Part shown: positions 3,401 through 39,000 of the stretch, piece by piece
Layout of the letters: the number at the start of each line of letters is the position of its first letter
How positions within the stretch are numbered: position 1 is the stretch's first letter
From: Hyphochytrium catenoides
Lineage: Eukaryota > Protista > Hyphochytriomycota
NCBI GenBank assembly: GCA_900088475.1
Contig: FLMG01004130.1
Coordinates: 38,908-102,907, forward strand
Direction: 5' to 3'
DNA length: 64,000 bases
The notes under the pieces: generated by a model
Told to the model about the DNA's origin: nothing
Database searches by the model: none
What the model saw: only the letters and a program-made list of their open reading frames with translations
Position numbers and translations under genes: made by a program

Positions 3401-6282
3401 AAAGACTTCAAGGGCGCTATCAAGTTCTTGTTGCTGTCCAAGCAGACAGAAGAGGCCTTCACGCTGGCACAGACCCATAATGAGATGGAGAGCTTTGCGC
3501 AGGTACTCATGGACTTTCTTCCTCTCATCTCTCGCTCTTTTCTCCAAGATTTTTGGACTCTATCTCAAAGGCGTTCTGCCTGCTCTCAGCTCGTTAACCT
3601 TGGCCTTTTCCTTGCTCCTGAAGCGTTCTTCTCTCTGTCCAAGTTGAGATGGAGGCTGGTAGCCTCAGTCTTAATCTTTCTCGTCCTAGTGGTAACTCAG
3701 AGACACTCCTTCTCGCGCTTCGAGCCTGGCCCGACCTTCTACTCCTTCAGACCCAATATCTCCACCATGGCTTTTGTCTCTTGTTTGGCTTCTGCTGACC
3801 CTCTTGTCCGCTGGAACCCATCATTTTATTCCTGTCTCTCTCTCTTCCGGAACGACAATCGATCTGTCCAGTTCTTGGGCGATGCGATCACGCCTGAGCA
3901 AGCGTTGAAAGTGGCTTATCACTTTGAGCAACATCAGATCTTTGCAAAGGCGGCAGACTTCTATGCGATATGCGGCCAGTACTCGAAGGCTCTGAAGCTC
4001 TACCTGCAGTGCGGCGACAAGGAGATGAACAAAGCGATCGACGTCGTCGGGAAGGCGCGACAAGACATCTTGACCCACACTTTGGTGGACTATCTCATGG
4101 GAGAAGTTGACGGGATCCCGAAGGATCCACATTATATCTTCAGACTCTACATGGTGAGTGCGCCAACGGGTTAGCTCTCTCTCTCTCTTGTGTCTGCACG
4201 GCACACATGTCTTCTCATTTTCCTGACCCTTTTTCTTCAAGTCTTTCCCTGTTTGACGCGGCTGTGGTCTCCTCTTCCAGGCCCTCGGAAACCATTCTCA
4301 GGCCGCCAAGACTGCGATAATCATCTCAAAGCAAGAGCAAGAGCTTGGGAACTACAAGGCAAGGAGTAGCTCCCCATCGATGAGTTAGCTTCATCGTCCT
4401 ACCTTCTCTGTGTCGGGCACTAATCTCTCACTATACGTCAAAAGCTATTGGGCTCTAATCTGCCAGGACCTTGCACTCTTATTGTCCCTCTGTTATTGTG
4501 GTACGGGGCACTGTCAACGACTGATCTGCGCTGCTTCCCCCTCTCACGTCCACACATTTTGACCTGTGACCGCTTCTTTAGCTAACTAGTGGCATCCTTC
4601 TCTCAGGCCGCGCACTACATTCTTTATGAGACACACAAAGAGCTCCTTGCGCACAATCTTAAAGTGCCTCAAGTCCTAAGAAAGTCTCTGACTCTTCTGC
4701 ACTCGTACGTGCTGGTGAAGAAGCTGGTGAAGGCTGAAGACCACGTACAGGCTGCGCGGCTCCTGTGCCGAGTGGCGCATAATATTAGCAAGTTCCCTCA
4801 GCACGTGGTTCCTATCCTTACCTCAGCCGTCATTGAGTGCCAGAGAGCAGGTTTAAAGAGTAAGGCCTATGAGTTCGCGCTGTTGCTGATGAGGCCAGAG
4901 CATAGACCGAAGGTGAGGGTCAGACATGCTGCATCTTTTCTCTCCTTTTGCCTCTCTCTTTTTCTCTTTTCTCTCACTCTAGCTCTTGTCTCTCTTGCCA
5001 GTCGTGCTCTGACTTTCTTCTCTGTGCCGTTTGGGGCACAGAGCTAGTCCACTTCTCTAAGGAGCTGCTCTCTGTGTATAGCAGATCCTTATTTTCCTTC
5101 TTCATTTCCACGACCTCGTTTCTCAGTATCTCTCTTACTGGCCTGCTTACCTTCCCTTTCACTTGTGACCCTCAGATTGATGCCAAGTACAAGCGGAAGA
5201 TAGAGGCAATGGTCCGGCGGCCAGCGCGAGGAGAGGACACGGAAGAGTCGATGAGCCCCTGTCCGTATTGCGGCGCCAGCATTCCTCAGAACGACTTGGA
5301 CTGTTCAAACTGCAAGAACAGCCTTCCCTTCTGCATAGTCACGGTAAGTCGTGAGGCAGGACAGAAAGCTTGCGAGGGAGTGGTACACAGAGAGAGAGAG
5401 AGGGGGCCGAAGCAGACAGAGAGAGAGACAGAAAGAAACTCAGAGGCAGAGAGGACTGAGAGATAGAGAAAGAGAGAGCAAACAGAAAGGAAGAAATAGA
5501 GAGGGAGGGAGGGGGACGGAGGAGGTGAGAGAAGAGAGAGGGAGAGACAGGGGTGGGGGTGAAATGGGAAACAGAGAGGGAACCGAACAAGCGGACAGAA
5601 AGGAGAGAGAGGAACGTGTGAGATGTAGCCAAGCAAAGGAGGGATAGAGTCGCTGCTCAGATACAATGTGTGGCTCTCTGGGTATACAGTCACCGCCGCG
5701 AAGCGGTTTCCGCTAGTGGCCTGAACTATTCACTGCAAGGCAGAACTCAAACGGATTCATCTCTAAGGATGTCTGTCTTCTCTCTCCTTTCTGCTCTCAG
5801 GGCCAGCACATGGTGCGGGACGATTGGTCTTGCTGTCCGAACTGCACCTTTCCCGCCATCTATTCAGCTCTAGTGAACTATGTGAAGGTCGATCCTGGTA
5901 TGCCGCTGCCTTCCTCAAACTCCAAGCTTCCTCCTAGGTCCTTGTCCTGCTCTCAGTCAAGAGTCAGTACATTGGGCGTTTACTTCTTCCACTCTTCCCT
6001 CTCTCTCGTTTCTCCTTTCCAACTCTATGTTCTCCTTTCTCCTTAGTAGACTTCTATCTTCTACTGCCCCGTCGGTTGATTTGGCCTCACATGTCCTGCC
6101 TGATCCCTCTATCCTCTGCGTGCTGGGGCTAAACTCTCCTTTCAGTGTGTCCTTTGTGCGAGAAGGCTGTCAACCCTGAGTTCATCAAGAAGATTGATGA
6201 TCCGACCCAGTATCTCAGCGGCAGCAAGGAGAAAGACGAACCCGACCCCAAGGATGAGGAGGTGCCAGAGGCTAGCTCCTAA
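440..6282 (+). CDS. WDR19: WD repeat-containing protein 19 / intraflagellar transport protein 144 (IFT-A complex); exons 440-3502, 3872-4153, 4281-4358, 4607-4912, 5176-5343, 5801-5897, 6146-6282
   Basis: N-terminal WD40 region (GTAKGNLLIYNHKNRKKIPIMGKHPKKITGGAW), TPR/solenoid (ALKMRRDLMHWDQALKLA; IPKDPHYIFRLYM|ALG; NISKFPQHVVPILTSAVIECQRAGLK), C-terminal Zn-binding CPYC..CSNC..PFCIVTGQHM..CPNC..CPLC. All exon joins keep frame; stop TAA 6280-6282. Confidence 0.96.
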
Positions 6283-10893: not shown

Positions 10894-11799
10894 GGGTGGG
10901 AATAAGAAAAAAGAGGAGACACGGAGTTGGTTAGAAAGAAAGAGAGCAAAGGAACAGCGCCACAAGAACGAAGACTTGTCTCCGGCTGGTCAAACCTCTA
11001 TCTCGTTAACTTCCGCTGACTTTCTAGATCTACTACCACCTTTGCCGCCGTGTGTCTACCTGGCCGTCTCTTCCTTGCGCTCTCACTCACTCTATCGCTT
11101 TCTTTCTCTTTCTCTCTCTCTCTGTGTCTGGCTGCGTTTACCTTCTTTCCCATGCCGGAGCCCTCTCTTTCCTCCAGGGACCTGAGAATCTTCAAAAAGA
11201 TCGCCGATGAATGGACTGGCCAAGTTCTTGAATCTCTCCGCCCCGACCACCACCATCGGCTGGTTAGCCAAAGACTTCACAATGCCCGCGGACTGCATGG
11301 CTCCAGAAACAGCAGAGAGAGAGGAAGAGAGAGAGAGAGAGAGATGGGGGGAGAGAGGGAGGAACGCGGCAGCAATTGTGCTGAAAGGTGCTGGTTCCTC
11401 TGAGTCTAGGTCCTATGCGGCGAAGAGCGAAGCAAGGGAAGAGCCTTCTCGAATCATCGCCACTCCCTGCAGTAACAGGANNNNNNNNNNNNNNNNNNNN
11501 NNNNNNNNNNNNNNNNNNNNNNNNNNNNNNNNNNNNNNNNNNNNNNNNNNNNNNNNAAAAGAGAAGAGAGAGGGAGAGGGCAAGAAAGAGGTGATGAAAG
11601 AGAAAGGAAGGATCCGGCTTCGGAGAGCGGAAGATCGAATCCTGCAATAGAGGCCTTTAGATCTTTCTTCCTCCTTTCTCTCCTGTCTTTCTCTCTCTCC
11701 TTTTTGATGAGAGTCCGTGAAGCTTGGCGTGTTCTGAAAGTTCAAGCTCTGGTTCATCCTTTTCACATCTTCACAGCCACGTGCCTCTCTCTCTCTCCT

Positions 11800-12609: not shown

Positions 12610-15600
12610 ATGCCTGCCCAAGTCCACGCTCCATCCTCCTTCAACGAAGAGAGCGAGGGAGATAGAGACTCAGAAAGAGAAAGAGAGAGAGAACCGAAGG
12701 GAGAGAGAATTGAAGAGACACAAAGAGAGAGAGGAGCTTGGAGAGAAAGAGACTGTGAGTTAGGTCACAAAGAGAAAGCACTGACTGACGCTGTGGCTAA
12801 GGCTGCTATCGCCTGCTATGAAGAGGTGGTTCCTGCCAGGTGTCAGCCGAAAGGAGGAGAGTGGACGGTGCTAGCCGCCATCGTTGCCGTGAGAGAGAGA
12901 GACGAAGAGAGAGAGAGACAACAGAATGGTTCAGGAGAGAAAGAGATGGTCGTTCTCTCTCTTGGGACAGGCACAAAGTGCCTTGGGATATCCTCAAAGA
13001 GGCGAGACGGCTCGGTGCTCAATGACTCTCACGCGGAGGTCATCGCTTGTAGGGCCTTCAGAAGGTACGCCACGTTTAGAGAATAGGAGAGAAATAACGA
13101 GAGAGCGAGAGAGAGCGAGGGAGAGAAAGAGGCAGAGAGCGTCCACTGTGCGTCCGAAAGGAATGAACAATGGAGAGACAAGGGGAGAGTGCGAAGGGAG
13201 ACAGAGATGGTGAGATTAGAAAGAGAGAGAAGAGAGACAGAGAGTGGAGAAGTGGTTGGACCTCAACAAAGCGAGAAAGAGAGAGGAAGGATGAAACTGA
13301 GAGAACACAGTGGTACGGACCCATAGGTGGATAGGACATTTAGAAAGAGAGGAAAGAAGGAGAGAGACAGAGAAACAAAGACAGACTGCGAAGGGAGAAG
13401 GATAAAATCACCAGGTTGCTAAGTGTCCGCGCTGCTCTAGGCTCCTCTTTCAAGAGGTTCACAATCACATAGAAGACGCGGTAAAGAACGAAGCTCACGG
13501 AGCAGAGAGAGAAGAGAGAGAGCATTGGGGACAAACTCCAACGGCTTTTTCTCTTCTTGAAACTGCAGACAAGGTTGGAGACCGTCTCTTCTTTCGTCTT
13601 AGAAAAGAAGTGAAGCTCTATCTTTACATTAGCGATGCGCCCTGTGGCGATGCTTCCATTTATGGCCTGAGTGGCCCGATGCAGAGCAGGTGAGATAGAC
13701 ACAAACCTCATGAAAGAGAAAGAGAGAGACAGGAGTTCAAAGAGACGAAGTCACAAGAAAGTTAGAGGAGAGAAAGACAGTCGAAGAAAGATATATGACG
13801 CCTTTTGAGAAAAAGAGAGTAGATAGATAGATAGATAGAGAGAGAGGTAATGAGAGAGAGAGAGAGAGAGAAAGAAAGAGAAGAAGCCTCGGTAAGAAGA
13901 GAAAATTGCTTCATTCCTGACTTTAGTTGTTTACGTTTTCCGCTTAGTACCGCCGTCCAGTCCCTGCCGCCAGAGATGAAGTTCACGGGGGCCAAAGTCG
14001 TGGTACCAGGAGAGAAAAAGCTCTCTCTCTCCTCCCCTTCTCTCTCAACGGCTGCTCAGGGGCTGCAGATAACCCGCGAGGGGGTTCAGACCACAGGCAT
14101 AGCAAGAATCAAGGCCAGCAGGAGTGATCTCAGGCCAGAGCAGAGGACCACATCCATGTCCTGCAGTGACAAGATAGCGCTGTAAGTCTCCCGAGTCCTC
14201 TCGGGGGCTTAAGCTTCTCTCTGTCTCTCTCTTTTCCTGGTTCTTCTCTCTCTCTCTTTCTTCCGCCTTCTTCTCTTTCTTCCCACGGGTTGTCCTTCTA
14301 TACATCTTCCGCAACCCTAATTATGCTGACCTGCATATATCTCCTCGAAGCCCGAAAACCCTTAGTCTCCTTTGGGACACCATCTCGTTTTCTCTCCCTC
14401 TGACTTCCTTTCTCTTTCCTACCGAGTCTGAAGTGCGAGCCAGATGCCCTGCTCTCTTCTCTCTCTCGTCCTGTCACTCTTTTTCTCTCTCTCTCTACTA
14501 TCTCGGTAACTCTTCGTCCACTATTCACTCGTATGTCCACACAGCACCATTTCCCTCACTCTCTCTCTCCGCCTCCGCTATCTGTGGTTGTCTCTCTCTC
14601 TTTCTCTGTGTCAGATGGTCCGTCGTGGGTCTTCAGGGTGCCCTCCTCTCTCAGTTCGTAGCTCCTGTTTACTTGCACGGCGTCATCGTCAGCCAAGATC
14701 CTTTAGCAGCTTCTGAAGCCATGGAGACTGCACTAGAGAGAGCGCTGATCAAGCGCCTCACTCCCTCTTCCTTCTCAGAAGAGAACCAAAAAGACCTCTG
14801 GGCTTCACTCTCTCCCACTCTCTCTCATGTAGCTGTGTCCTCGCACATGTTCCTGAGCTCTAAGGCGCTCATCACTCGAGATGACGATATGGAAATGAAC
14901 AAGGAAGAGACAGGAAAGAAAAGAAAGAAGTTCTTTCCTTCAGGTGCCTCTATCAATTGGATCTCTTCTCTCTCTAACTGCCGCTCCTCGCCCCTCGCTG
15001 ACGGTAACAAAAGAAGAAAAGTTGACACTCTCCCCCGTCTTGAGGTGACAAGTGGCTCTATTGGGCTGAAGCAGGTCAGTTTGAATGATCGAGGCACTCT
15101 ACTCGCTCAAGAAAAGCATACACTTTCTATGCTTTACATCCTTCTTCTCACTAATCCTGGACCTCTCTCTCTCTCTCTCTGTCTCAACCTCTACCTTCCT
15201 TTCCTTTTTCTCTGAGGCAGTCTTCTGTTCCTATTCGAACGCCAGTACACTTCTAACCTCTCTTTCTTGCTTTAGTTAATTGCTCTGATCTCAGTCACCT
15301 GCATCCTTGATACCTTTGTCTCTCTCATATCTTGCCGTATCCATCGATTGTTTGTTGTCAGGGAGCAAGCAAACAGTCCACGGGACTGTCAGTCCAGTCT
15401 CGGCTGTGCAAAGCTTCCTTTCTTCGCCTCTACAATGAGCTTCTGTCTCTCCTAAACCCAGAGGGGGAAGAAGCGAAGAGCAAGAGCCCCAGAGAGGAGA
15501 AGACAAAGGGTGGAAAGACATACAGAGAAAGGAAAGAAGCGGCTCAGCGGCACTATCGGGAGAGAAAGGCGATGGCGCTTGAGCTATTTCCTGCTTTTCA

Positions 15601-16703: not shown

Positions 16704-18050
16704 ATGAGCGACCAACAAGAAGTGCTGGTAGTCCATGATCACTGCGACCTACAGCAGAGAAAGGACATAAAAGATCAGCAATCTGCAGTTACGAAGCAGC
16801 ACCAGTTCTGCTTGAAGAAGAATACACAGAGAGAGCAACGAGAAGACTGTGGATCTCAAGAGAGAGAGAGAGTGTGCGCGTGTGAGAGAGCAACTATGAC
16901 AGGAAATAAGGTTTCTGTAGTCTAACTGACTGGCAATGGGAACCTGCGCTGCACCTCCAGAGAGAGAAGATGTGAATGCATCCAAAAGGGCTCTGAGGCT
17001 CTTTTCCTAGATGGAGGAGATATGAATGATGATGATAGATGATAGGACAGAGAGAGAACAAAGGGAGATAGATTGACAATCAAAGGGGAGAAGAAGAGAT
17101 AGGGGAGAGAGAGAGCTGTAAGAGAGAGAAGAGAGAGAGAGAGGGAAAGAGAGAGGTAGGAAAGAGAGAAGAGTGAGAGAGAGAGAGAGAGAGACAGGAG
17201 AGAGAGATGATGCTTCTTGTTCATGGAAGATGACCAATAGGTTTCAATCTTCGATAGCTTCACATCGGCTCAATTGTTTCATAGCGATATAACCTTGCAT
17301 TCTATTTCTTTCTTTTCCTTCAGTGAAATGTATCCATCAGCCATCAGAGATAGGAATCCTTAAATGCCGAGCTCACTCTCTTTCTCTGCTGGTTCTCCTT
17401 TCTCTTTTCATCTCTCTCTCTCTCTCTCTCTCGCCTTTTCTCTTTCTCAGGCTTTCTCCCATCCTGTCACTTTCTCTCTCTTTCTCTGTTNNNNNNNNNN
17501 NNNNNNNNNNNNNNNNNNNNNNNNNNNNNNNNNNNNNNNNNNNNNNNNNNNNNNNNNNNNNNNNNNNNNNNNNCACTATCTTTCTCTCTCCAACGTCGTA
17601 GATGCAGAGAGATATTGCAGTTGAAGAACTGCTGAAAGATGTCCAAACCCGTGCAATGTCTTCCCACGTCTTTAAGGTATGTCCAAGGATATTCCTATCT
17701 AGTTTCTTCACTCTCCGTCGTTCCCTTGTGATCTCTCTCTCTCTCCCTACCTTTGTCTGTTGGCCTATAAAGTTAGAAGCTTTTAGCGAGATAGAAAGTG
17801 AGAGACCAGTGACTCTCTTCTCTTCTTATCCATTGTCCCACCCCATGGATCTTCATTACTGGGAAGGTCTCTCTCTCTCTGTGTGTCTCTCTCTTCCTCC
17901 TTCTCTCTGTCTATTCCTGTCTCTGTCTATCTGTCTCTCAATCTCTCTCTCTCATCTTGGGGTGATGCATAGTATCTCGCCGTGTCACAGTTGATGCAAA
18001 GTCCAAAGCGCTTCTGCCTCAACGAACAGGACAGTTGCAGGGAGAGATGA
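16704..18050 (+). CDS. possible small hypothetical spliced gene (exons 16704-16910, 17602-17676, 17991-18050)
   Basis: Three non-repetitive islands bounded by AG/GT join in phase 0 (…MTGNK|MQRDIAVEELLKDVQTRAMSSHVFK|LMQSPKRFCLNEQDSCRER*). No recognisable domain, and an N gap lies in the first intron. Confidence 0.2.
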
Positions 18051-18700
18051 CGAGGAACCATGTTGATGCTTTTAGCCACAATCTCTCTCTCTCTGTCTCT
18101 CTCTCTCTCTCTGTCTCCCTTTTCTCTAGCCCCTCTTCAGTCGCTCTCTCCCTCAATCTCTCTAAATCTTTTGTTCTTGGCCTTTCTCCTCCCTGGCTCT
18201 TCTTCTCCCTTCAGTTCCCTCCTGTTCAGTCCGTTGTGGTTCCCACCCCGATCATCTGACGCTTCCATGACAGCGCGAATGGAGATTCTGCTGTCTGATG
18301 ACGCGGGCGACGAGAGCCGCAGACCGATCCAGAGAGAAGNNNNNNNNNNNNNNNNNNNNNNNNNNNNNNNNNNNNNNNNNNNNNNNNNNNNNNNNNNNNN
18401 NNNNNNNTTCTCCTCCTTTTACTTCTCTCTCTCTCTCGCTCATCTCTCTCTTCTCTATTCCTCTTGATCCCTCATGTGCCTTTCCACTATAAATCTTGAG
18501 ATCTTGGAACACTCTGTCTCTTTTCTCTCCCAACAACTGCGATTGGGAAGAGAAGAAGGCTAGCTTCAATCAGTCATTTCCTTATTTTCCAGGTCCAGAC
18601 AACTCTTTCCTCCTCCCCCACAAACGGAGACTCTCTTCTGCTGTCAAGAGACGGAGAAGCAGAAGCGGAAAATCTACACGCGCTATCACCTCGCGGCAAG

Positions 18701-19774
18701 ATGACGGCCTACCGCCAGACAGAAGACGAGGCTCGGCCCCTCCATCGCCAAGAAGTTAGCCTGGAGGAAGGAGAGAGAGTCCAGGGAAACAAGAGCACTG
18801 TGTCTCTTTCTCGCCGCCGCTCTTCCGTCCTTCAAGCTGGCGCCTTGTTGGTTGCGTGCTTTGTGGCAGTAGCGCTCTACGTTGGCACATCCTTCTCTGC
18901 TTCCTCTTCCGTTATCTCTTCCTCCTCCACTGCTCTGACCAGCAGCAGCCACCGCCATCTCGGTCTCTTCCCCAGCTTTGAGTTCCCTAAGATCCTTCCT
19001 GATCCTGTTATTAACGATGTGAAGGTCATCTCAGGGACGAAAGACACGCTGACTGTTCTCTCTCCTACCACCATGAAGAGTCCTCTCCCTTTCCCCATCC
19101 CATTGTTCGGCAAGGACCTCATCTTTGACATTCTCTATGACGGTGTCAAGGTAGGAAATGGCAGAATCCCTGACTTCGTACTCAAGGCCGGCTCCTTCGA
19201 CGTGGACGCAACAGTGGAGATGTCTCCCTCTTTGGCAGAAGAGAGGGAGAAAGTGGACGAAGTGCTCGAGAGACACGCCAACCGGCTGCCTTCTAACATT
19301 ACTATGGCAAATCTCCGCACTGATCCGCCTTCTCTTCTTCTCAATGGCGCTCTGAAGCTTCTCAAGCTCAACTCTGTCTTGCCTCCGCTTAGCGAGCTTC
19401 TCATCAGGAAGATTAATATGCAGATTTCCTTCAGTAGCCTGCCCAAGGTGCCTACCTCTGTCGACATGTTCAACCCCTTCGATGTCCCGATCACCATCAC
19501 TTACCTGGCAAGCAATGTCTCAGCCAAGGGATCGCCTATTGGAGCGCTAGCGCAGGAGACAAACATTCTTCTACCTCCAAAGCAGGTCTCTACTTCTCCT
19601 GCCATGGATGCGACGGCTGTCTTGAGCGGAAATGCAATCAATATCATCGCTCAGCTGGCCGCGGGCAAGCTGAATGTCACTGTGGCCTCAGAGATGAAGC
19701 TGAAGGTGCAGGAGTTCCCAACTTCCATGACATACCCTCAGGACAACGTACCTGTGGCTGTAAAGATGGGCTAG
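18701..19774 (+). CDS. single-exon type II membrane protein with two LEA_2/DUF3712-like beta-sandwich repeats
   Basis: 357-aa ORF. TM segment GALLVACFVAVALYVGTSF after a basic RRR, Ser-rich linker, repeat 1 (SPLPFPIPLFGKDLIFDILYDGVKVG), repeat 2 (VDMFNPFDVPITITYLASNVSAKGSPIG; NPxxxxI..G motif typical of LEA_2/WHy). Confidence 0.7.
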   Translation: MTAYRQTEDEARPLHRQEVSLEEGERVQGNKSTVSLSRRRSSVLQAGALLVACFVAVALYVGTSFSASSSVISSSSTALTSSSHRHLGLFPSFEFPKILPDPVINDVKVISGTKDTLTVLSPTTMKSPLPFPIPLFGKDLIFDILYDGVKVGNGRIPDFVLKAGSFDVDATVEMSPSLAEEREKVDEVLERHANRLPSNITMANLRTDPPSLLLNGALKLLKLNSVLPPLSELLIRKINMQISFSSLPKVPTSVDMFNPFDVPITITYLASNVSAKGSPIGALAQETNILLPPKQVSTSPAMDATAVLSGNAINIIAQLAAGKLNVTVASEMKLKVQEFPTSMTYPQDNVPVAVKMG

Positions 19775-21569: not shown

Positions 21570-22320
21570 TCACCACTATGGACCTAGACATACCTAGTCG
21601 AGGATTTCTCTCAGGTTCCGATCAGCCAGAAGGAAGGAGAGACGTTTTCATTTGTGACCAGAGACGGAGTGTATAGATCCGTCAGATTGCCACAAGGAGC
21701 TAACATTAGTCCCAACGATCATGGACATCACCTTCAACGGGATCCGATTCCAGCTCGTGATCTGTTACATCGAGGATGTCCTTACCTACTCTACGCTCCT
21801 CGAGGAGCACGTAGCACACGTGAGGACCGTAGTGGAGAGGCTGCGGGCCGCTGGCCTTAAGGTGAGGCTTGCCCAGCGCCTTCGCCCCAAAGCACGGTGA
21901 AGTATGTAGGCCATGTCGTCTTCAAGGAAGGTTGCAACCTTAAAACGATAAGGTCGATCCTGACAGATCAGACCTTCCTGGGAAATGGTTGGCTAGTATC
22001 GCCGATTTGTTCTGCTTGAAGAGAGATTCGTAAGCCTCTTATGGAGCTGCTGAAGAAGGAGGTGAACTTCGTGTGGACAGACAAGTGTCAGCAAGCCTTT
22101 GACGCGCTCAAGCGGGCTCTAGCCACGTCACCATATCTACGAGCACCAGAAAGTGATCGACAGTTCATAGTACACATGGATGGCAGCAAGTACGCAATCG
22201 CTGCAGTGCGATCACAGCTGGACGAAGACGGCGAAGAGCATCCTATCGGATTCTATTCGAAGGCACTCTCAACGCTATACGGCACCACCGAAAGGCAGCA
22301 AAGTTGTTGTGGCAAGGGCT
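21570..22320 (+). mobile_element. Ty3/Gypsy reverse transcriptase-RNase H remnant (pseudogenised)
   Basis: VTRDGVYRSVRLPQG; CYIEDVLTYSTLLEEHVAHVRTVVERLRAAGLKV (YIDD changed to YIED at 21766-21777); VKYVGHVV; TFLG..YRRFV; LLKKEVNFVWTDKCQQAFDALKRALATSPYLRAP..FIVHMDGSKYAIAAV..EHPIGFYSKAL. Multiple frameshifts. Confidence 0.9.
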
Positions 22321-23125
22321 CCTGACCCCACAAGAGTATCGCACTTGTGATGCACAGAAAAGAGTCAAGGACTGGGACTCTTGGAAGGCCTTGGTGCAGC
22401 AGGGCAGGCGGACGAGATGGCGCGTGCTCCTGAGAGACAGGAGAAAAGAAGGAACGCTGGCAGATAGAACCCAGAGTGAAGGAGAAGCGTCTCACAGCGA
22501 GGTGACGACACAAATGCAAGGAGTAGCAAGAAGAGCAAGACAGACGGGGGCCGCTACTTCCCTAAGATGTGCCGTTACTACTATGCTCATCCGCTGAGCT
22601 AGAGAGAACGCGCACAAATGGGACTCGACCTTGTAGAGCGATGCAGCTCCCATCCTCATCTTGCCACCCCTTGGGTCGTGTCGGCATCCTCCCTGTGGCA
22701 CTTCTCCTTGATTCTGGATTAAATCTGCCCACGTTCCTCCTTTTCTCCCTGTCTCTCAGGAGTACGCGTTCCTCCTTTTCTCCCTGTCTCTCAGGAGCAC
22801 GCGTGTCATCAGAGGTCCTCGTCCGCCTGCCCTGCTGCACCAAGGCCTTCCAAGAGTTCCAGTGCTTGACTCTTTTCTGAGCATCACAAGTGCGATAGTC
22901 TTGTGGGATCAGGAATCCTTGGCACAGTAACTTGGCTGCTTTCCGTAGTGCCGTATAGCATTGAGAGTACCTTCAAATAGAATCCGACAGGATGCTCTTC
23001 GCCGTCTTCGTCAAGCTGTGATGGCACTGCAGCAACCACATACTTGGTGCCGGTGCCATCGGTTTGAAGTATGAACTGCCGTTCAAAGTCTGGTTGCTCG
23101 TCGCTTTGGTGCCGTGGCTAGAGCG
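22115..23125. repeat. long imperfect inverted repeat (arms ~22115-22530 and ~22660-23125) made from the retroelement RNase H region
   Basis: gacgaagacggcgaagagcatcctatcggattctattcgaaggcactctcaacgctatacggcac (~22221-22285) is the near reverse complement of gtgccgtatagcattgagagtaccttcaaatagaatccgacaggatgctcttcgccgtcttcgtc (~22948-23012). ttggaaggccttggtgcagcagggcaggcggacgag (22381-22416) pairs exactly with ctcgtccgcctgccctgctgcaccaaggccttccaa (~22818-22853). Confidence 0.95.
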
Positions 23126-24040: not shown

Positions 24041-25132
24041 ATGGTGGAGCAACTCGAATATCATCAGTCTCAAGGTGACAACCTTTCTTCCTACGAAGCC
24101 ATCCGCAGAGAGCGAATCGCTAGAAATGCCCAGGTGTTGCGCTCGTTAGGGCTGCAGAAGCCTCTTCTTTCCTCTCCTCTCTCTCTTCAAACAAACAAAG
24201 ATTCCCGAAAGAGGAAAAGAGAGCAACAACAGACAGAGGAAGAAAGAGACGGTAGACTTCTTCGTCGGTCCTTAAGGAAGCTGGGTCAGCCGCAGGTAAA
24301 CTATCGAGAGGAGCCTAAGGCCGACAAGAGAGAGAGAAGCAGAGCCAACCAAAGGGCTGTCCCTGTCACAAAGGAGAAGAAGGAAGGCGAAGAGAAAACA
24401 AAGAAAGACATTCGCCCTCGTCCTGAGCCTTCCAAAGACAGCATTCTTCTACAGGATGCAGATCTTTCCCTCATTGTTTCTCCGACCATACTAGGCCAGC
24501 TCTTCTCTCTCCCTGGCAAGGAGACAGTGGTTCGGTCTCTCTCTCTCAGGCAAAATGTTGTTCCACGTTTCTCTAAAATGAGTGGCTTGACGGAATGGAA
24601 GAACTGTATATTCTTATGGGTTAATATCGGAGGAGACGACTATGAGAACGTCTTTGAGAAGAGTGAGACGGTACCCAAGAGAAAAGGAGAAGAAGACATG
24701 AGAGGAGAAGATGGGAAAGAAGTAAGAGAGAGGGGAGAAGAGCCGAGAGAAACCAGGACTGAAGGAGAGAAAGAGAGGGCAAAAAGGATCGAAGACGTGA
24801 TGACTATGACTTGGTTCTGCTCCCCTCGCTATTCTGAAGACTCTCCCATCGTCCAGCGTCTTCTGCCTTTCCAAGCACGGATACACGACGACGAGAACGA
24901 CAAAAAGAGTGAGCGGGAGGACACACAAGGGATGAAAGATGAGAGAAAGGATGTCTTTCTCTTCTGCCGCCTGATAGGAGAGCCGTATGTCGCCTGTGGG
25001 CGGCTGGAGTATATCAGTCATGACCCTCAGAGCCGTCCCCTTCGCTTTGTATGGAAGCTTCAGGACTACGAAGGACTGAGCGCTTCGCAGACAGCAAGAA
25101 AAATATTTGAATGGAAAAGTCCGAAGAGATGA
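24041..25132 (+). CDS. intronless predicted nuclear protein: CDCA7-like N-terminal motifs plus C-terminal DUF3427-like (PUA-superfamily) domain
   Basis: 363-aa ORF. LSSYEAIRRERIARNAQVLRSLGL, RKRKR (NLS-like), LRRSLRKLGQPQVNYREE, then CIFLWVNIGGDDYENVF…MTWFCSPRYSEDSPIVQRL…VFLFCRLIGEPYVACGRLEYISHDPQSRPLRFVWKL. The CDS is well supported; the domain names are my motif recognition. Confidence 0.75.
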   Translation: MVEQLEYHQSQGDNLSSYEAIRRERIARNAQVLRSLGLQKPLLSSPLSLQTNKDSRKRKREQQQTEEERDGRLLRRSLRKLGQPQVNYREEPKADKRERSRANQRAVPVTKEKKEGEEKTKKDIRPRPEPSKDSILLQDADLSLIVSPTILGQLFSLPGKETVVRSLSLRQNVVPRFSKMSGLTEWKNCIFLWVNIGGDDYENVFEKSETVPKRKGEEDMRGEDGKEVRERGEEPRETRTEGEKERAKRIEDVMTMTWFCSPRYSEDSPIVQRLLPFQARIHDDENDKKSEREDTQGMKDERKDVFLFCRLIGEPYVACGRLEYISHDPQSRPLRFVWKLQDYEGLSASQTARKIFEWKSPKR

Positions 25133-25907
25133 ATGGAAGGCACGATTCTCTTCTCTCTCTCTCTCCTTACTGGACTCTCTCTCCTCCTTGAAAGCCCCGT
25201 ATTGTTCATGTAGAGGTCACATCTAACCTATTAATGGCTCTCTCTCACGGAGACGGACAGACAGAAGGGGGAGAGAGACAGGGAGAAAGAGCGCAGAGAA
25301 GAGGAAAATGGCGTTCGGGTCCATGCTAATAGGAGGCATACACCTGTGAGGATGCAGAGACGCATAAGAGGAGTCAGAGAAGACAGACAAGACACGTGGA
25401 TAGAGAGCCTGTTGTGTCGCCTGGCTGACTGACACACATCACAACCCTTCTCTGTCTCATCTTTTAGCTCGCAATGTGTGAACCCCAGCGCCGCCAAAGA
25501 TGTGGAAGGAAGCTTGTCAGCCAAGCAATGAGAAATGGAAAGGACAAATTTTTTGCCCATCAGGGAGAAACAGCACAGTTCCCTGCCACAGAAAGAGCGC
25601 AACCTGTAGAACGGCGCAACCCAATGTTCTCTCTCTCTGTCTGTCTCTGTCTCACGCTCTGTCAGGTAGCACCGTCACTTTCTTCGCCAGACAATTGATG
25701 ATCCAACACAGGCCTGGCCCAGATCTGTCGGTCTTTGGCGGCGGTGAGCCATGATGTCGTGACACTGGCTTCTCATGATTCCACCTCTCTGCCTCTCTTC
25801 CTCATCATCGCCACTCAATCTTTTTCATCCTTTCATGGCATTGAAGGTTGACCGGTGAGGGAGAGAGAGAGGGAGAGAAAGAGAAGAGAGAGAGGTGAAG
25901 AGAAAGA

Positions 25908-25940
<33 letters not shown>

Positions 25941-26821
25941 GAAAGCACGCCAAAAAAGCACCAAAGACTGCAGAAAGTCTCGTCTCTTTGACCGTTTTTC
26001 CCACCCAGGTCTCTCTCGTCACCTAGCTCTATCTCTTCCACCTAACAGAATATCTATTGTATCCATGTAGGATATACAATAACTGTTAATAGCCCAGTCT
26101 TTCGTTGTAGTTGATTGCTCTGTCTCTCTCCTGTAGACTCTGTTTGTTGCGCTTCTTGCTCCAAAAAACCCAACACCACCAACTTTTTACAATCGCCTCC
26201 AAAACCGAGGATAATCGTGGAAGCCCGAGACTACCAATTTTACATACAATGACCCCTAAATCAAATGTTATATCTAGGCCCTATCAGTCTTATAAGCACG
26301 GCGTACCTAGCCTGTAAGCATGGCCCAATGCTTGCCACCAAACTATTTCCTTTGAGAGCCGAATCTAGCTGAGGTTGACCTCGTCCTTCACGGTATTACC
26401 ACTACCGCGAAGCCCTAGCTCTTTCCTACCGTCCGCTCCCGCATATATGGCGTATTATTATGGGTGTTGAGCATGGAGGAAGATTGTGGAAAGCCTTGGA
26501 AGAGGCCAAAGATCTGATTCCTTTCCCTTGTGAGACAGAAACCGCTCAGGACCAGAAGAATGGAAGAGACAGAGCAGCCAGAGAGATGGAACCTTGCCGA
26601 GACAGTGGCTACGTTAAAAGTGGACGTAGGAGCTTAGAACTATAGTGAATTGAAGACACAGAGGACGTCTGAGATATATAGGCTGGAAGAAAGAGGCTGA
26701 GGTAGAGGTATATGAAGAGACAGAGACTGGCGCTTGAAGGACGACTGACAAGCGACAGACAGAATGGAGGGAAGAGCAGGAAAGGAGAGAAGGGAGAGAG
26801 AGAGGGGTGAGGAGGAAGCAC

Positions 26822-26855
<34 letters not shown>

Positions 26856-27469
26856 AGACAGGGAGAAAGGGGAAAAGAGAGAGAAAGAAAAGATAAAGAG
26901 GAGACAGAGAAGAGAGAGGGAGAGAGAGAGGGGAAGAGAGAGAGAGGAGAGGGAGAAAAGAGAGCACAGAGAGAGAGAGAGAGAGAGAGAGAAAGAGTGG
27001 GGGAACAGGGAGAGAGAGAGAGAAAGAGAGAAAGAGAGAGANNNNNNNNGAGAGAGAGAGAGAGGGGGGTATAGAGAGACAAAGAGAGGAGCCAACAAAC
27101 AACTTGATGGACCAAGGTTTCCCGCAAAAAGAAGAGCCAGACCCCGCTCTCAAGCTAAAAGAAGCTCATGCAGAAAGAGACGCAGCTTCATGAAGAACGA
27201 GACCATCGCAGACCAAAGCTGCGCCCGTGACCTCATAAAAGGAGTGAAGCTTCCCCAACAGGCGGGTGACCTCAGGTCCAGAGTGTCCTCCTATTTTCAA
27301 ATGGCAGGATAGTCTCTGAGACAGAAAGGAGGAGAGAGAGAGAAAACGAGAGGAAGAAAAGAAGGAGCAGGAGGGATACAGAGAAAGGTGGGCCAGCGAT
27401 AGAGCTTTCGCCAGAGTCTCTGCTTCTCCCTTGTTAGACTCTACAGAGTTCTAGCAGAGAGAAGGCAAG

Positions 27470-31911: not shown

Positions 31912-32609
31912 CTGTCTCTTTCTTTCCCTTCCCTTCTCCCTCTCTTTTCTTCTCTCTCTCTTTTCTTCAACCCTCTCACAGACTTGCCTTCAACTTCCAG
32001 GTAGGCGGGAAGTACAATGGGAACAGAGAGAGAAGACTGAACCCCAGGAAAGAAGGGCAGTGTGGGGGCGTAGCTTAGCTTAGCTGAGAGGCAGCCTCTG
32101 TCTCTTGTCTCGGGAGCTCTAGGAAATCTGGCTGAGACGATGGAAGTGGATGACAGAGCAGAGCTGCGCTTGGTGGAGACAACCTTGGAGTTGATGTTCC
32201 CTCTCGCTCTCGCTCTCGCTCTCTGCTCTCTCTCTCTCTTCTCTGTCTCGCTCTTCCCTCCCGCTCTATTTCTCTCTTCTCTTTCTCTCCCTCTCTTCTC
32301 CACTCATCTCCTTTCTTCTCTCTCTCTCTCTCNNNNNNNNNNNNNNNNNNNNNNNNNNNNNNNNNNNNNNNNNNNNNNNNNNNNNNNNNNCTCTCTCTCT
32401 CTCTCTGTCTCTCTCTCTCTCTCTCTGTGTCTGTCATTCTCTCCCCTTTCAGAACTGATCCCACAGCCAAGTTCTCTACTCGAGATATTTAGAATTATGC
32501 GATATTGGTTCTGCATGCAGTTGACGTGATTCCTGATGCGCATGACCACTGTTCAGAAACGGTGTGACTTTTTGCGTTTTGATCCTTTTTCATGGATCGC
32601 GAATGCTCC

Positions 32610-36000: not shown

Positions 36001-39000
36001 TACAGCAGAGGAGGAGAACCCAGACGCGGCAGTTGTTGGCATTGAACAGGCTCATCAGCGAGGTTGTAGAGAAAGCATCCAATGAAGAGAATGGAGACCG
36101 AACAGAGACGCTCAGAGAGGCCCTCACTCGTCTATCTTCTAAAATGCCCAAGAGTGAGCTGCGACTAGTAGATGTAAGTGGAGACATCCTTCGTTTTCCT
36201 CTCCTTGCTGCTTAGCGGTGTTCTCAACTTTCAGCGGTTGGTCATTCCAGTTTCTTGTTATGTCCGTGGCTTCAGATGTGGTCGGGGATTCTTCTATGTT
36301 CTCTCTTTCTGTCTCTTGGCGCTTTGCATCGGGCAGTCTCTCCTCACATGTTTGACTTGTGCCTTGCTTTATCCTTCGTCGCAGCTGTTGGTCCACATGG
36401 TGGCCGGGAACAGCCGTCTCTTTCTCCTCTGTTGCATCAGAGCGGGTGCATCATCCTTTCTTGACTCCGTCAACAGTCTTAGAGTTGCGTCTAGGGCTAA
36501 GGAGATAACCACTAAGTGTCACACAGTGTCTTGGCATATAACTGACTCTACGCGTCATAAAGAGAATAAAGGAAGGGTACGTTCAAAGGTGAGCCTCCTG
36601 TCCACTACTGTCTGGCCCCTACTTCTCAACCTCGAAGGCATCCTCCTTCCCGTCATTGGACACCAAGCCCCATCTTTACTAAGCCACGTCTCACCCTTTT
36701 TGGCGTTCTTCACTGTCATCCTCTGTCTCTCCCTTGGGGCTTTTCTCTCTGCTGACCCCCGGCATCGAGAAGGCCCCTTCTGTCCAGAAAGGTCCTCCAA
36801 AGGAGTCTGGTGCCGCGAATCAAGCCGCCGTTTTCCCGTTAAACGAAGAAGTTCCAGGCGCCGGCCCGCCAGCCTCAATCTTTTCAACCTCAGCCTCCCC
36901 GGAGGAGCAGGTGAGTTGAGCTCTTCTCGTTGTGATTAAAGATAGGCTGCGCTTTATTCTGTTAGCTTTCCCAGGCTTACAATGTCTACTGAGTTAGCTC
37001 TTTTTCCTTTCCCAGTGGTCTGCTGTCTTCAAATCGCAATATAACGGACAGTTGGCACTTTCCTTCGCCTGTCTCCCTTTCTTCGATGCTGTTGTCTGTT
37101 GCTCTCCGCCCGAAGCGTCCTACTCCTTGACCATTACTCCTCAGGCCGCTCTGTATGACGCCACCGCAACCCAGCTTTGGAAAGAGATTATGGAGGCTAC
37201 GGAGCGTACGTTTCTTCATTCTTCCCCTTTTCCTTGGATTCTTAAGTTTATCACACTGTCAAGCTTGTCTCCCTCCTTATCAATCGTTTTCGAGCTACAC
37301 TCTCTCACTCTTCGTTTACAACTAACGACTCAGAAGGCGGCTAAATATTCTGTTTTCCAGCGGAGCTCCAAGAGTTAGGGCAGGACGTGCAGTTGGAGAA
37401 TGACGAAAAGAAGGACCTCAAACCATCTGTGGCGCCCTCAGCCCCACCGTCCACTGGTGATGAAGGCAGCCAGAGAGCCAGCGGATTCGATGCTCCCGGC
37501 CAGGCTCCGGTACGAAAGCCAATGAGTTGACTATCTCCACTACATATTTTTCTCTTATCCCTGTTCAAACTATGCCGTCTGCATCTTCGCAGGCTTCCTG
37601 TCTGGTTGCCCTGAGTAAGTTCCTCTACCCTCAACTCTGACTCGCTTCTGGTACGCTCTGTGGCCAGATAGTCTCTCTCTGTCTCAGGCTCTCAATGGGT
37701 TTTCCTCGCCTTCTCAGTTTTCACTTCACTTGGTCCTTGGCTAACAACAAGCATTTCTTACTCTCTTTCCCACTTGCGCCAGAACGGACTTCTGGAGCAA
37801 AACTATGTTACAATCCTGGAGATTTTGAAGGTGGGTGGTTGGACTGGCTTTGGCCCTCACAGAGCAATTGCTGTGTGGCCTTGTTGCACCTTCGTCGCCT
37901 CCTCGACCTTCTAGTACCAAAGTCGCTTCATCAAGAGTAGCTCACCGGTCTTCGTCTCTGGCTTACTGCATATCTCTATACCTACTCTTTGATTACCAGG
38001 AGGAGCATGCAATAAAGGAGCAGCTAGAAATCCGAATGAGGCAACTAGAGCTCACCTTGGAGGAAAGAAGCACTGAATATGAAGTCAAGGTAGGGCAGCA
38101 ATTCAGACTATAGAGAGAACAGACGAAAGAGAGCTCTCAAGAGCAAGAAGAGGGACAAAGAGAACGGCAGCCCGGTGACAGAAAACGATTGGATAGGCTG
38201 TAAGGAATTGACAGTAGCCGGGACTATGGGATAGATGTCATGGCACGTAGAGACAAGTTACTGAAGAGGTTGACATGGGACTATAGATCCATCTGTTGAT
38301 GCCTGACTAATCCTGACAACCGGTTTTCTTTCCTTTCTCATCCTTGCCATGGAGATTGATACTCTTCTCCTGGAGCTCACAAAAACTAAAGCGATGCTTG
38401 CCAACAGCCAGAACGGCTCGAGTATGAGAAGAGTCTTTGACCTGGTATTCATGTCCATTCTGCTTGTTGCTGCTAAGCCCTTCTCCCCTCCAGTCCCTAA
38501 GGACACTAATTCTAACCCTCCCTTCCTGCACGGGAAAAGGACACATAATCTCTTCTCTTTATCCTCATTTCTCAGCTAACTCAGGGCCCAGTATTGCCAG
38601 AATCTGACTCTTCTTGCATTCTCTCTTTCTCCTCATCTGGTTGTTCCTCCTCAGTATGAAGAGGAGATCAGAAAGCATCAGCAAGAGCTTCGATGGCTTA
38701 GAGAGAGCAATGTCCTCTTGCATCTTGGGGTGGGCAACTCCTGGCCGTGTTGATCGACCATACACCTCGTGTCACTTCCTCTGAAAATTTGTCCTTTCTG
38801 TTCCTCTTTGTAGCTCTCGCCTTTCCTTGCACTTCTCTAGCATCTCTCACCTTGCTCAGAGCTCCTTCGGCGTAACTTTTCCCCGTTGACTGTTTTGAGT
38901 TATGATCTCAAGCGACAAGGGGATTGGACTCCCTCCTCGCAGCCTTCCTATGATCTTCCCCATCATCCCAAATGAATTGCCAGTATCCCTTCTTATGCCT

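What the first reader, a model, noticed from the sequence alone, without database searches (positions are those of the whole stretch)
24041..25132. CDCA7-like HELLS/DDM1-recruiting motifs fused to a DUF3427-like domain: candidate alternative eukaryotic modified-DNA reader
Seen in sequence: the N-terminus has SSYEAIRRERIARNAQVLRSLGL (~24080-24155), an NLS-like RKRKR and RRSLRKLGQPQVNYRE. The C-terminus has LWVN…DDYENVF…MTWF…SEDSP…VFLFCR…PYVACGRLEYISH…RPLRFVWKL. Established knowledge: a YExxRxxxIxxNxxxxxxLG helix followed by RRSxRl…vxYxE is typical of plant-type CDCA7 N-termini. CDCA7 uses such a helix to bind the remodeller HELLS/DDM1, while its zf-4CXXC_R1 reads hemimethylated CpG. DUF3427 is a PUA-superfamily fold (related to SRA/EVE/YTH) found in bacterial modification-dependent restriction enzymes and helicase fusions, with a Y.D…W…LFvR…pY.flG…yvsh…rP….w.L pattern. 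Inference: here the zinc finger is replaced by a bacterial-type modified-base reader, giving a chimeric adaptor that could target HELLS/DDM1 to 5mC or another modified base. The gene is intronless in an intron-rich genome, consistent with recent acquisition or retrocopying, and lies ~1 kb from decayed retroelements.
Basis: partly seen in the sequence, partly recalled or inferred. Interest (0 to 1): 0.85.

Follow-up and report, generated by a model that had tools for sequence, protein, structure and literature searches.

The report
Chromatin adaptor with SRA-like base reader
This single-exon gene encodes a member of a widespread but unnamed protist protein family. It joins the N-terminal docking cassette seen in CDCA7-type chromatin adaptors to a restriction-enzyme-type (SauUSI/DUF3427, SRA-like) base-reading domain, so it may be an unrecognised way of coupling DNA marks to chromatin remodelling.

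Summary
Window 24041-25132 (+) is an intact 363-codon ORF, and every quoted motif is present.

It is not a recent chimera or retrocopy. It belongs to a conserved eukaryotic family with at least 620 cluster representatives. The named members are Ectocarpus, Heterosigma, Bigelowiella and a MAST, all annotated only as 'hypothetical' or 'conserved unknown'.

**C-terminal domain (residues ~125-357).** It folds confidently.
- Its best structural match is the SauUSI restriction enzyme. The next matches are other modification-dependent SRA-like readers.
- Pfam DUF3427 is hit by 8 of 78 relatives (best E 4.2e-10), but not by the window protein itself.

**N-terminal cassette (a helix plus an RRSxR...Y motif).** It is a mobile module.
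- A metagenome scan found it upstream of a zf-4CXXC_R1 (CDCA7-type) domain.
- The same scan found it upstream of WD40, chromo, PWWP, HhH-GPD, Myb and HRDC domains.

Three of its claims are not shown:
- that the cassette is specific to CDCA7;
- that it recruits HELLS/DDM1;
- that the ligand is 5mC.

The neighbouring WDR19 gene places the window in a stramenopile-like protist. SAR lineages are reported to lack CDCA7 almost entirely, which makes a substitute adaptor plausible.

Verdict: a new variant of a known kind. Interest 0.7.

The parts
24041..25132 (+). Complete single-exon coding sequence, 363 codons plus TGA.
   Evidence: ORF list. Its ends align with the family N- and C-termini. Only copy in the window.
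24086..24154 (+). N-terminal amphipathic helix, residues 16-38, with the pattern Y-E-x2-R-x3-I-x2-N-x6-L-G-L. It resembles the CDCA7 HELLS/DDM1-binding helix.
   Evidence: AF2 helix 17-35, with 10-residue block-mean pLDDT of 95 (21-30) and 90 (31-40). In A1, Y18, E19, R22, N29 and G37 are 92-98% conserved. The same helix occurs in a zf-4CXXC_R1 ORF and seven other architectures.
24206..24220 (+). Basic RKRKR run, residues 56-60, in the disordered linker. NLS-like.
   Evidence: Sequence. Basic runs sit at the same place in relatives. AF2 pLDDT is below 50 for 47-72. Nuclear import is inferred, not tested.
24263..24310 (+). RRSxR...Y-x-E motif, residues 75-90. Candidate arginine anchor for the nucleosome acidic patch.
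   Evidence: R75, S77 and R79 are 96-98% conserved. The motif follows the helix by 22-42 residues in non-family ORFs too. Weak matches to the KMT5A/SET8 RRSSR segment in nucleosome complexes and to Pfam Shugoshin_C and HMG14_17 in single relatives. Function is inferred.
24413..25111 (+). C-terminal folded domain, residues ~125-357. DUF3427-related, SRA-like beta-barrel; predicted flipped-base or modified-base reader.
   Evidence: AF2 domain model: pLDDT 83.7, pTM 0.79. Foldseek top hit SauUSI 7clg_A, then LpnPI, MspJI, AspBHI, TagI, SUVH5, UHRF1 and ScoMcrA SRA. Top viral-library hit is a ScoMcrA-like SRA protein. Pfam DUF3427 in 8 of 78 relatives. PADLOC mREase_IV in 2 of 78.
24659..24796 (+). 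Lineage-specific charged low-complexity insert, residues 207-252, in a loop of the domain.
   Evidence: Absent from more than 75% of aligned relatives; 59-70% D/E/K/R. Low pLDDT. A few relatives have inserts at the same loop. The two GT..AG options I checked by hand are not multiples of three.

Best explanation
The ORF encodes a nuclear chromatin adaptor of an old, unnamed eukaryotic family. It has two working ends.

**C-terminal domain (residues ~125-357).**
- Shown by prediction: it is an SRA-like beta-barrel of the DUF3427 type, the target-recognition module of SauUSI-type modification-dependent restriction enzymes.
- Inferred: it most likely binds DNA by flipping a modified, hemi-modified or damaged base into a pocket.

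**N-terminal cassette.**
- Shown: it consists of a conserved helix (16-38), a basic disordered linker and an RRSxR...Y motif (75-90). The same bipartite module sits on CDCA7-type zinc-finger proteins and on WD40, chromo, PWWP, DNA-glycosylase, Myb and HRDC proteins.
- Inferred: the helix docks a shared partner, most probably the HELLS/DDM1-type SNF2 remodeller. The RRSxR motif anchors on the nucleosome acidic patch.

**Net effect (inferred).** A base mark read by the C-domain is converted into local remodeller recruitment or nucleosome tethering. This parallels what CDCA7 does with hemimethylated CpG.
For: **The gene is real and conserved**
-.

**The architecture is conserved**
- 93 of 105 members with at least 90 residues ahead of the domain carry the helix. 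80 carry helix, RRS motif and domain in that order.

**Fold of the C-domain**
- AF2 pLDDT 83.7, pTM 0.79.
- SauUSI is the top PDB hit for both models: probability 1.00 and 0.99, 178-205 aligned columns. The following hits are almost all modification-dependent SRA-like readers.
- The top viral-library hit is a ScoMcrA-like SRA protein.
- Pfam DUF3427 is hit by P0001 and by 8 of 78 relatives, best E 4.2e-10. PADLOC mREase_IV is hit by 2 of 78.
- The SauUSI TRD is an SRA fold modelled to flip 5mC (PMC7913695). DUF3427 fusion proteins bind 5mC/5hmC DNA (PMC6765204).

**The N-terminal cassette**
- A metagenome scan returned 44 loci. Only 2 carry the C-domain.
- The others include zf-4CXXC_R1 (E 8e-39), Chromo, zf-PARP+PWWP, HhH-GPD, Myb, HRDC and WD40.
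- The profile of family N-termini against the profile of those modules gives hhalign probability 99%, E 3.7e-18. The 71 aligned columns include the RRS motif.

**Literature**
- The CDCA7 N-terminal helix binds HELLS/DDM1 (PMC11343034, PMC12711577, PMC12718391).
- WDR76 binds LSH/HELLS/MUS-30 from fungi to mammals (PMC4714748).
- CDCA7 is absent from SAR except Tribonema (PMC10538959). The window is stramenopile-like.
Against: - The window protein itself gives no Pfam, NCBIfam or PDB-sequence hit.
- Foldseek E-values are only about 1e-2, with TM-scores of 0.2-0.4.
- Pocket residues were not mapped, and no invariant Asp comparable to the SRA cytosine-binding Asp appears among the conserved columns. 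The ligand is therefore unknown.
- The loci used to show module sharing were retrieved with patterns taken from the helix itself. Helix similarity is therefore partly by construction. Only the RRS motif, the spacing and the downstream domains are independent evidence.
- The WD40 proteins could not be shown to be WDR76 orthologues.
- R35A and N42L in Arabidopsis CDCA7alpha did not abolish DDM1 binding (PMC12711577). The conserved residues may therefore serve another partner.
- A cassette on so many different readers could be a generic nucleosome tether rather than a HELLS handle.
- The family occurs in Ectocarpus. From my own knowledge, not checked here, Ectocarpus was reported to lack detectable 5mC.
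- Whether this organism has HELLS or DNA methyltransferases could not be tested.
Confidence: 0.5

Rival explanations
1. Chromatin-tethered reader without a remodeller. The N-terminal cassette is a generic nucleosome-binding module, with an acidic-patch arginine anchor plus a histone-contacting helix. It simply holds many different reader domains on chromatin. HELLS/DDM1 is not its partner.
For: - The cassette precedes at least eight unrelated domain types.
- The RRSxR core resembles the KMT5A/SET8 segment present in nucleosome complexes (E 0.6). Single relatives touch Pfam Shugoshin_C and HMG14_17.
- WDR76 and HELLS are both listed as acidic-patch interactors (bioRxiv 10.1101/2024.06.26.600687).
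- R35A and N42L did not break DDM1 binding in Arabidopsis (PMC12711577).
Against: - The helix position and its conserved E/R/N spacing match the experimentally mapped HELLS/DDM1-binding helix of CDCA7 (PMC11343034, PMC12711577).
- Two of the architectures that carry it, CDCA7-type and possibly WDR76-type, are the known HELLS partners (PMC4714748).
- All matches to acidic-patch binders are statistically insignificant.
Confidence: 0.25
2. The C-terminal domain does not read a DNA modification. It binds RNA, unmodified DNA, damaged DNA or a protein. The SRA-like fold has been reused, as in other PUA-like domains (YTH, ASCH, EVE).
For: - YTH domains also appear in the Foldseek lists.
- No conserved Asp/Tyr pocket signature was identified.
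- Family members occur in lineages with little or no 5mC (Ectocarpus; the 5mC statement is from my own knowledge).
- WDR76-type and HhH-GPD partners of the same cassette point to DNA-damage contexts (PMC4714748).
Against: - The closest structural matches are consistently DNA 5mC/5hmC or phosphorothioate-dependent readers. YTH hits rank far lower.
- Pfam DUF3427 and PADLOC mREase_IV are the only recurrent family-level hits.
Confidence: 0.2
3. Recent horizontal acquisition, retrocopy or decaying pseudogene next to retroelements, with no conserved function.
For: - Single exon.
- A decayed retroelement remnant lies about 1.7 kb upstream.
- The exact product is not on record in the protein collection.
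Against: - The frame is intact and all 26 conserved family positions are kept.
- The bipartite architecture is shared by most of the family across stramenopiles and Rhizaria.
- Relatives in compact protist genomes are also single-exon, with ordinary eukaryotic neighbours.
- Similarity to bacterial DUF3427 is remote.
- There is no poly-A tract downstream.
Confidence: 0.04

Closest known systems
CDCA7 / CDCA7alpha,beta (zf-4CXXC_R1 hemimethylated-CpG sensor and HELLS/DDM1 adaptor)
   Same: Overall logic: an N-terminal partner-binding helix, a basic linker and a C-terminal DNA-mark reader. The helix plus RRSxR cassette of the window protein aligns with that of a metagenomic zf-4CXXC_R1 protein (L036). 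Its E/R/N spacing equals the published DDM1-contact residues of AtCDCA7alpha (PMC12711577).
   Different: There is no zinc finger: only 4 cysteines and no PF10497 hit. The reader domain is an unrelated SRA-like beta-barrel. Binding to HELLS/DDM1 is untested.
SauUSI target-recognition domain / Pfam DUF3427 (PF11907), and McaZI-type DUF3427-nuclease fusions
   Same: Best structural match. Family relatives hit PF11907 and PADLOC mREase_IV. The domain has an SRA fold associated with 5mC/5hmC recognition (PMC7913695, PMC6765204).
   Different: The family is eukaryotic, with no nuclease or helicase attached. The window protein itself falls below Pfam detection. It carries two lineage-specific inserts. 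Specificity is unknown.
SRA domains of UHRF1 and SUVH5/6, and MspJI/LpnPI/AspBHI readers
   Same: Same fold class in the Foldseek lists. Reader domains that flip a modified cytosine.
   Different: Matches are weaker than to SauUSI (E above 0.1). There is no detectable sequence similarity and no SET/RING or nuclease partner domains.
WDR76 / Cmr1 (WD40 partner of LSH/HELLS/MUS-30/Irc5)
   Same: WD40 proteins in the metagenome loci carry the same N-terminal cassette (L016, L044, L026). WDR76 is a conserved HELLS-family interactor (PMC4714748).
   Different: I could not show that those WD40 proteins are WDR76 orthologues. The window protein has no WD40 domain.
Arginine-anchor nucleosome binders (HMGN RRSARLSA-type motif, KMT5A/SET8 basic segment, Shugoshin C-terminal motif, CENP-C motif)
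   Same: A short RRSxR core in a disordered basic region, followed by an aromatic residue. There are weak profile matches.
   Different: All matches are statistically insignificant. The resemblance to HMGN and CENP-C rests on my own knowledge and was not returned as a named hit for the window protein.

Membership tests
Unnamed eukaryotic family (Ectocarpus CBJ25836.1 / D7FLM0-type 'conserved unknown protein') | Full-length similarity: N-terminal cassette plus C-terminal domain, in that order | tested here: met
   phmmer E values reach 2.8e-35, with matches in both halves. All conserved columns are kept. The order helix < RRS < domain holds in 80 of 105 members.
Pfam DUF3427 (PF11907) | Score above the Pfam gathering threshold (27.7 bits) | tested here: not met
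   No hit for the window protein or for its C-terminal part. P0001 scores 20.7 bits. 8 of 78 relatives hit, best E 4.2e-10. Membership is therefore only transitive.
Pfam DUF3427 (PF11907) | SRA-like fold as in the SauUSI TRD | tested here: inconclusive
   SauUSI is the top hit for both models (probability 0.99-1.00) but with E about 1e-2 and TMq 0.22-0.38. The hit lists are dominated by SRA-like readers.
Pfam DUF3427 (PF11907) | Modification-dependent DNA binding with a flipped-base pocket | not testable with these tools
   No coordinates or superposition were available, so the pocket residues of SauUSI (PMC7913695) were not mapped.
CDCA7 | zf-4CXXC_R1 domain with its eleven conserved cysteines | tested here: not met
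   No PF10497 hit. Only 4 cysteines in 363 residues.
CDCA7 | N-terminal HELLS/DDM1-binding helix | tested here: inconclusive
   The cassette aligns with that of a zf-4CXXC_R1 ORF, and the residue spacing matches AtCDCA7alpha contacts (PMC12711577). No named CDCA7 sequence could be compared directly. The loci were retrieved with helix-derived patterns.
CDCA7 | Physical binding to HELLS/DDM1 | not testable with these tools
   No multimer prediction is available, and the organism's HELLS is not at hand.
WDR76/Cmr1 | C-terminal WD40 propeller | tested here: not met
   No WD40 hit in the window protein.
HMGN-type nucleosome-binding motif | Match to Pfam HMG14_17 | tested here: not met
   No hit for the window protein. 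One relative hits at E 0.067.

The most novel reading that the evidence does not exclude
The helix plus RRSxR cassette is a universal plug-in handle. It couples many different chromatin and DNA readers (CDCA7 zinc finger, WDR76-type WD40, chromo, PWWP, glycosylase, Myb, HRDC and this SRA-like domain) to the HELLS/DDM1 remodeller on the nucleosome.

The DUF3427-type family would then be the functional substitute for CDCA7 in SAR lineages that lack it. It would read a hemi-modified base, possibly something other than 5mC (6mA or a hydroxymethylated pyrimidine), to direct remodelling after replication.
Probability: 0.22. Interest if true: 0.88.

Novelty: new variant of a known kind. Interest (0 to 1): 0.7.

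Why it matters
CDCA7-HELLS is the remodelling complex most closely tied to maintenance of DNA methylation. CDCA7 is reported to be missing from almost all SAR genomes (PMC10538959).

A conserved SAR-wide protein that carries the CDCA7-type N-terminal cassette on a different base-reading fold would have three consequences:
- It would give a concrete candidate for how such lineages couple DNA marks to remodelling.
- It would show that the cassette is a mobile adaptor module shared by many readers.
- It would document a eukaryotic career for a domain so far discussed only in bacterial modification-dependent restriction.

All of this is directly testable with binding assays, structures and phyletic profiles. 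If the cassette turns out to be only a nucleosome tether, the family is still an uncharacterised SRA-like reader.

Tried and rejected
**Searches that gave little or nothing**
- Pfam, NCBIfam and PDB-sequence searches with the window protein alone gave nothing.
- Word-indexed protein searches were insensitive for this family. They returned 1 hit and 2 hits with the profile. The exhaustive phmmer search was needed.
- Profiles of the family and of the N-terminus against PDB sequences gave no significant hit and no CDCA7 chain.
No bacterial DUF3427 alignment could be built, so there is no profile-profile test against bacterial members.

**Ideas I dropped**
- I first took the window for a coccidian because of its CT/GA repeats. 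WDR19 relatives point to stramenopiles instead.
- I asked whether the charged inserts are retained introns. The two GT..AG options I checked by hand in the sequence were not multiples of three, the tract is GA-rich, and some relatives have inserts in the same loop. I treat them as coding.
- The WD40 ORFs could not be assigned to WDR76.

**Other dead ends**
- Bacterial promoter and terminator scans are uninformative here.
- I could not confirm from the papers read that Ectocarpus lacks 5mC.

- The script printed stop-to-stop open-frame pieces for 19.8-23.9 kb, a stretch that includes the retroelement remnant. I made no use of them beyond choosing pieces for a Pfam scan.
Full report
**1. What is in the sequence**

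Window 24041..25132 (+) is a single ORF of 363 codons, with an ATG start and a TGA stop. The helix motif is residues 16-38, RKRKR is 56-60, the RRSxR...Y motif is 75-90, and the C-terminal motifs run from LWVN (192-195) to RPLRFVWKL (332-340).

The frame opens only 24 nt upstream of the ATG. No other frame in the window resembles any part of the protein. Taken alone, the protein has no hit in Pfam, NCBIfam or PDB sequences.

**2. It belongs to a large, unnamed eukaryotic family**

- An exhaustive phmmer search of 1.84 billion cluster representatives found 620 relatives at E<=1e-3, 274 at E<=1e-10 and 8 at E<=1e-30. Most are 250-400 residues long and match both halves of the query.
- In a 51-sequence alignment the window protein keeps all 7 invariant and all 19 nearly invariant positions.
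- Names are sparse and uninformative:
  - 'conserved unknown protein' in Ectocarpus siliculosus (CBJ25836.1 / D7FLM0);
  - transcripts of Heterosigma akashiwo and another MMETSP protist;
  - Bigelowiella natans;
  - a MAST assembly;
  - many marine-metagenome 'hypothetical proteins'.
- Relatives sit as single-exon genes among ordinary eukaryotic neighbours (SNAPC3, PfkB, pyruvate kinase, EF-hand proteins) in compact genomes.

The gene is therefore old and vertically distributed. It is not a recent chimera.

**3. The C-terminal domain**

AlphaFold2 on the family alignment gives a confident domain from about residue 125 to 357. It has two low-confidence loops. The domain-only model has mean pLDDT 83.7 and pTM 0.79.

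Foldseek against the PDB:
- SauUSI (7clg_A) ranks first for both models, with probability 1.00 and 0.99, 178-205 aligned columns and E about 1e-2.
- The next hits are LpnPI, MspJI, AspBHI, TagI, the ScoMcrA SRA, the SUVH5/6 SRA and the UHRF1 SRA. YTH domains rank lower.
- The best viral-library hit is a 'ScoMcrA-like SRA domain-containing protein'.
- No single E-value is significant. The composition of the lists is what carries weight.

Sequence profiles agree:
- PF11907 (DUF3427) is hit by P0001 at 20.7 bits.
- It is hit by 5 of 51 and by 8 of 78 relatives, with a best E of 4.2e-10.
- PADLOC's type IV methyl-directed restriction model is hit by 2 of 78.

The literature identifies DUF3427 as the SauUSI target-recognition domain (PMC6765204). 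Its crystal structure is an SRA fold modelled to flip 5mC into a Tyr/Phe/Ile/Trp pocket, with an Asp reading the base (PMC7913695).

I could not superpose coordinates, so the pocket is unmapped. No invariant Asp stands out in the alignment.

The window protein also carries a 46-residue charged insert (207-252) that most relatives lack. This probably explains why Pfam misses it.

**4. The N-terminal cassette**

*Within the family.*
- Of the 105 members with at least 90 residues ahead of the domain, 93 have the helix, 85 have the RRS motif, and 80 have both in the order helix < RRS < domain.
- Y18, E19, R22, N29, G37, R75, S77 and R79 are 92-98% conserved.

*Outside the family.* I scanned metagenome contigs with two peptide patterns taken from three relatives' helices.
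- Of the 44 confirmed loci, only 2 encode the C-terminal family domain.
- The others place the same helix in front of:
  - zf-4CXXC_R1, the CDCA7 domain (L036, E 8e-39);
  - Chromo (L052);
  - zf-PARP plus PWWP (L037);
  - HhH-GPD (L032);
  - Myb (L027);
  - HRDC (L017);
  - WD40 propellers (L016, L044, L026/28/30);
  - several ORFs with no Pfam domain.
- In many of these ORFs, including the zf-4CXXC_R1 one, an RRSxR-type motif follows the helix by 22-42 residues.
- A profile of family N-termini aligns with a profile of eight such non-family modules at 99% probability (E 3.7e-18) over 71 columns, which span both motifs.
- A Pelagophyceae protein (KAJ1456926.1) also has the cassette without the domain.

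*Caveat.* These loci were retrieved through the helix. Its similarity is therefore partly by construction. The RRS motif, the spacing and the downstream domains are the independent evidence.

**5. What the cassette may do**

Published work shows that an N-terminal helix of CDCA7 binds the CC2 helix of HELLS. Deleting the helix abolishes binding (PMC11343034).

In Arabidopsis, the N-terminal 136 residues of CDCA7alpha bind DDM1. The predicted contacts are E32, R35, E41 and N42, which are conserved through the green lineage. R35 and N42 are also conserved in vertebrates (PMC12711577; see also PMC12718391). The offsets E(+0), R(+3) and N(+10) are exactly those of E19, R22 and N29 here.

WDR76/Cmr1, a WD40 protein, is the other conserved partner of LSH/HELLS/MUS-30/Irc5 (PMC4714748). 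I could not show that the WD40 ORFs I found are WDR76 orthologues.

Arguing for caution:
- R35A and N42L did not disrupt DDM1 binding (PMC12711577).
- The RRSxR core gives only insignificant matches to the KMT5A/SET8 segment found in nucleosome complexes and to Shugoshin_C and HMG14_17.
- Its resemblance to HMGN and CENP-C arginine anchors is from my own knowledge.
- WDR76 and HELLS are themselves listed as acidic-patch interactors (bioRxiv 10.1101/2024.06.26.600687).

**6. Source organism and context**

The neighbouring 1244-codon ORF (440-4174) is WDR19/IFT144. Its best named relatives are oomycetes and ochrophytes at 43-47% identity. Unnamed metagenomic proteins reach 51-54%. The window therefore comes from a flagellated, stramenopile-like protist that has no close sequenced relative in the collection.

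CDCA7 is reported absent from all SAR genomes examined except Tribonema minus, and 20 of 180 species keep HELLS alone (PMC10538959). This makes a substitute adaptor plausible. I could not test whether this organism has HELLS or any DNA methyltransferase.

About 1.7 kb upstream lies a decayed retroelement remnant. An RVT_1 fragment and an RT_RNaseH_2 fragment sit in different reading frames within 21658-22322. That means at least one frame change plus stops. No poly-A tract follows the ORF.

**7. Verdict**

'DUF3427-like' and 'CDCA7-like N-terminus' both stand.
- The cassette is a mobile module shared by many readers, not a CDCA7 signature.
- The architecture is ancient, not a recent acquisition.
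- HELLS/DDM1 recruitment and the nature of the recognised base remain inference.
- I rate it a new variant of a known kind, a CDCA7-style adaptor with a different reader, in an uncharacterised family.

The script printed stop-to-stop frame pieces over 19.8-23.9 kb, a stretch that includes the retroelement remnant. They are not repeated here. They were used only to choose pieces for the Pfam scan.

The joined-exon product of the Pelagophyceae gene was used only through its protein id.

Noticed in passing
window 21658-22322 (+): Decayed retroelement pol remnant. An RVT_1 fragment and an RT_RNaseH_2 fragment lie in different reading frames, so there is at least one frame change plus stops. No gag, protease or integrase turned up in the pieces searched.
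   Followed up: partly
window 440-4174 (+): WDR19/IFT144 as one 1244-codon open frame. Best named relatives are oomycetes and ochrophytes at 43-47% identity, and unnamed metagenomic proteins reach 51-54%. The window is from a flagellated stramenopile-like protist, not an apicomplexan.
   Followed up: partly
L036:114-1511, L052:3001-3900, L037:890-2218, L032:571-1866, L027:158-1156, L017:2986-3642, L016:254-2119, L044:299-1816: The same helix (in L036, L017 and L044 followed by an RRSxR-type motif at E<=0.02; not detected in L052, L037, L032, L027 or L016) precedes zf-4CXXC_R1, Chromo, zf-PARP+PWWP, HhH-GPD, Myb, HRDC and WD40 domains in marine metagenome contigs. This is a shuffled chromatin module, and I found no description of it in the papers searched.
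   Followed up: partly
L008:6001-7670 (Pelagophyceae sp. CCMP2097, KAJ1456926.1): A 487-residue hypothetical protein with the N-terminal cassette but a different, Pfam-less C-terminal part. Its helix is split by an intron. A DNA ligase gene lies 3 kb downstream.
   Followed up: partly
window 11481-11556, 17491-17573, 18340-18407, 27042-27049, 32333-32390, 58531-58567, 61461-61490: Seven runs of N (8-83 bases). The window is from a draft assembly with gaps.
   Followed up: no
window ~25800-27320, both strands: Long CT/GA microsatellite-like tracts give overlapping spurious ORFs rich in L/S or E/R repeats on both strands. They explain the strong local GC and AT skew swings in the composition profile.
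   Followed up: no
window 14433-15215 (+), 18701-19774 (+), 36178-36939 (+), 51300-52100 (+): Other gene fragments: an adenosine-deaminase (editase) domain piece, a LEA_2 protein, the last part of a kinesin motor, and a GNAT acetyltransferase. The partial domain coverage of the deaminase and kinesin pieces suggests that those genes are split by introns.
   Followed up: no
window 24659-24796 and ~24884-24949 (+): Two charged low-complexity loops inside the folded domain. The first (46 residues, 59-70% D/E/K/R) is absent from most relatives and probably hides the domain from Pfam.
   Followed up: partly
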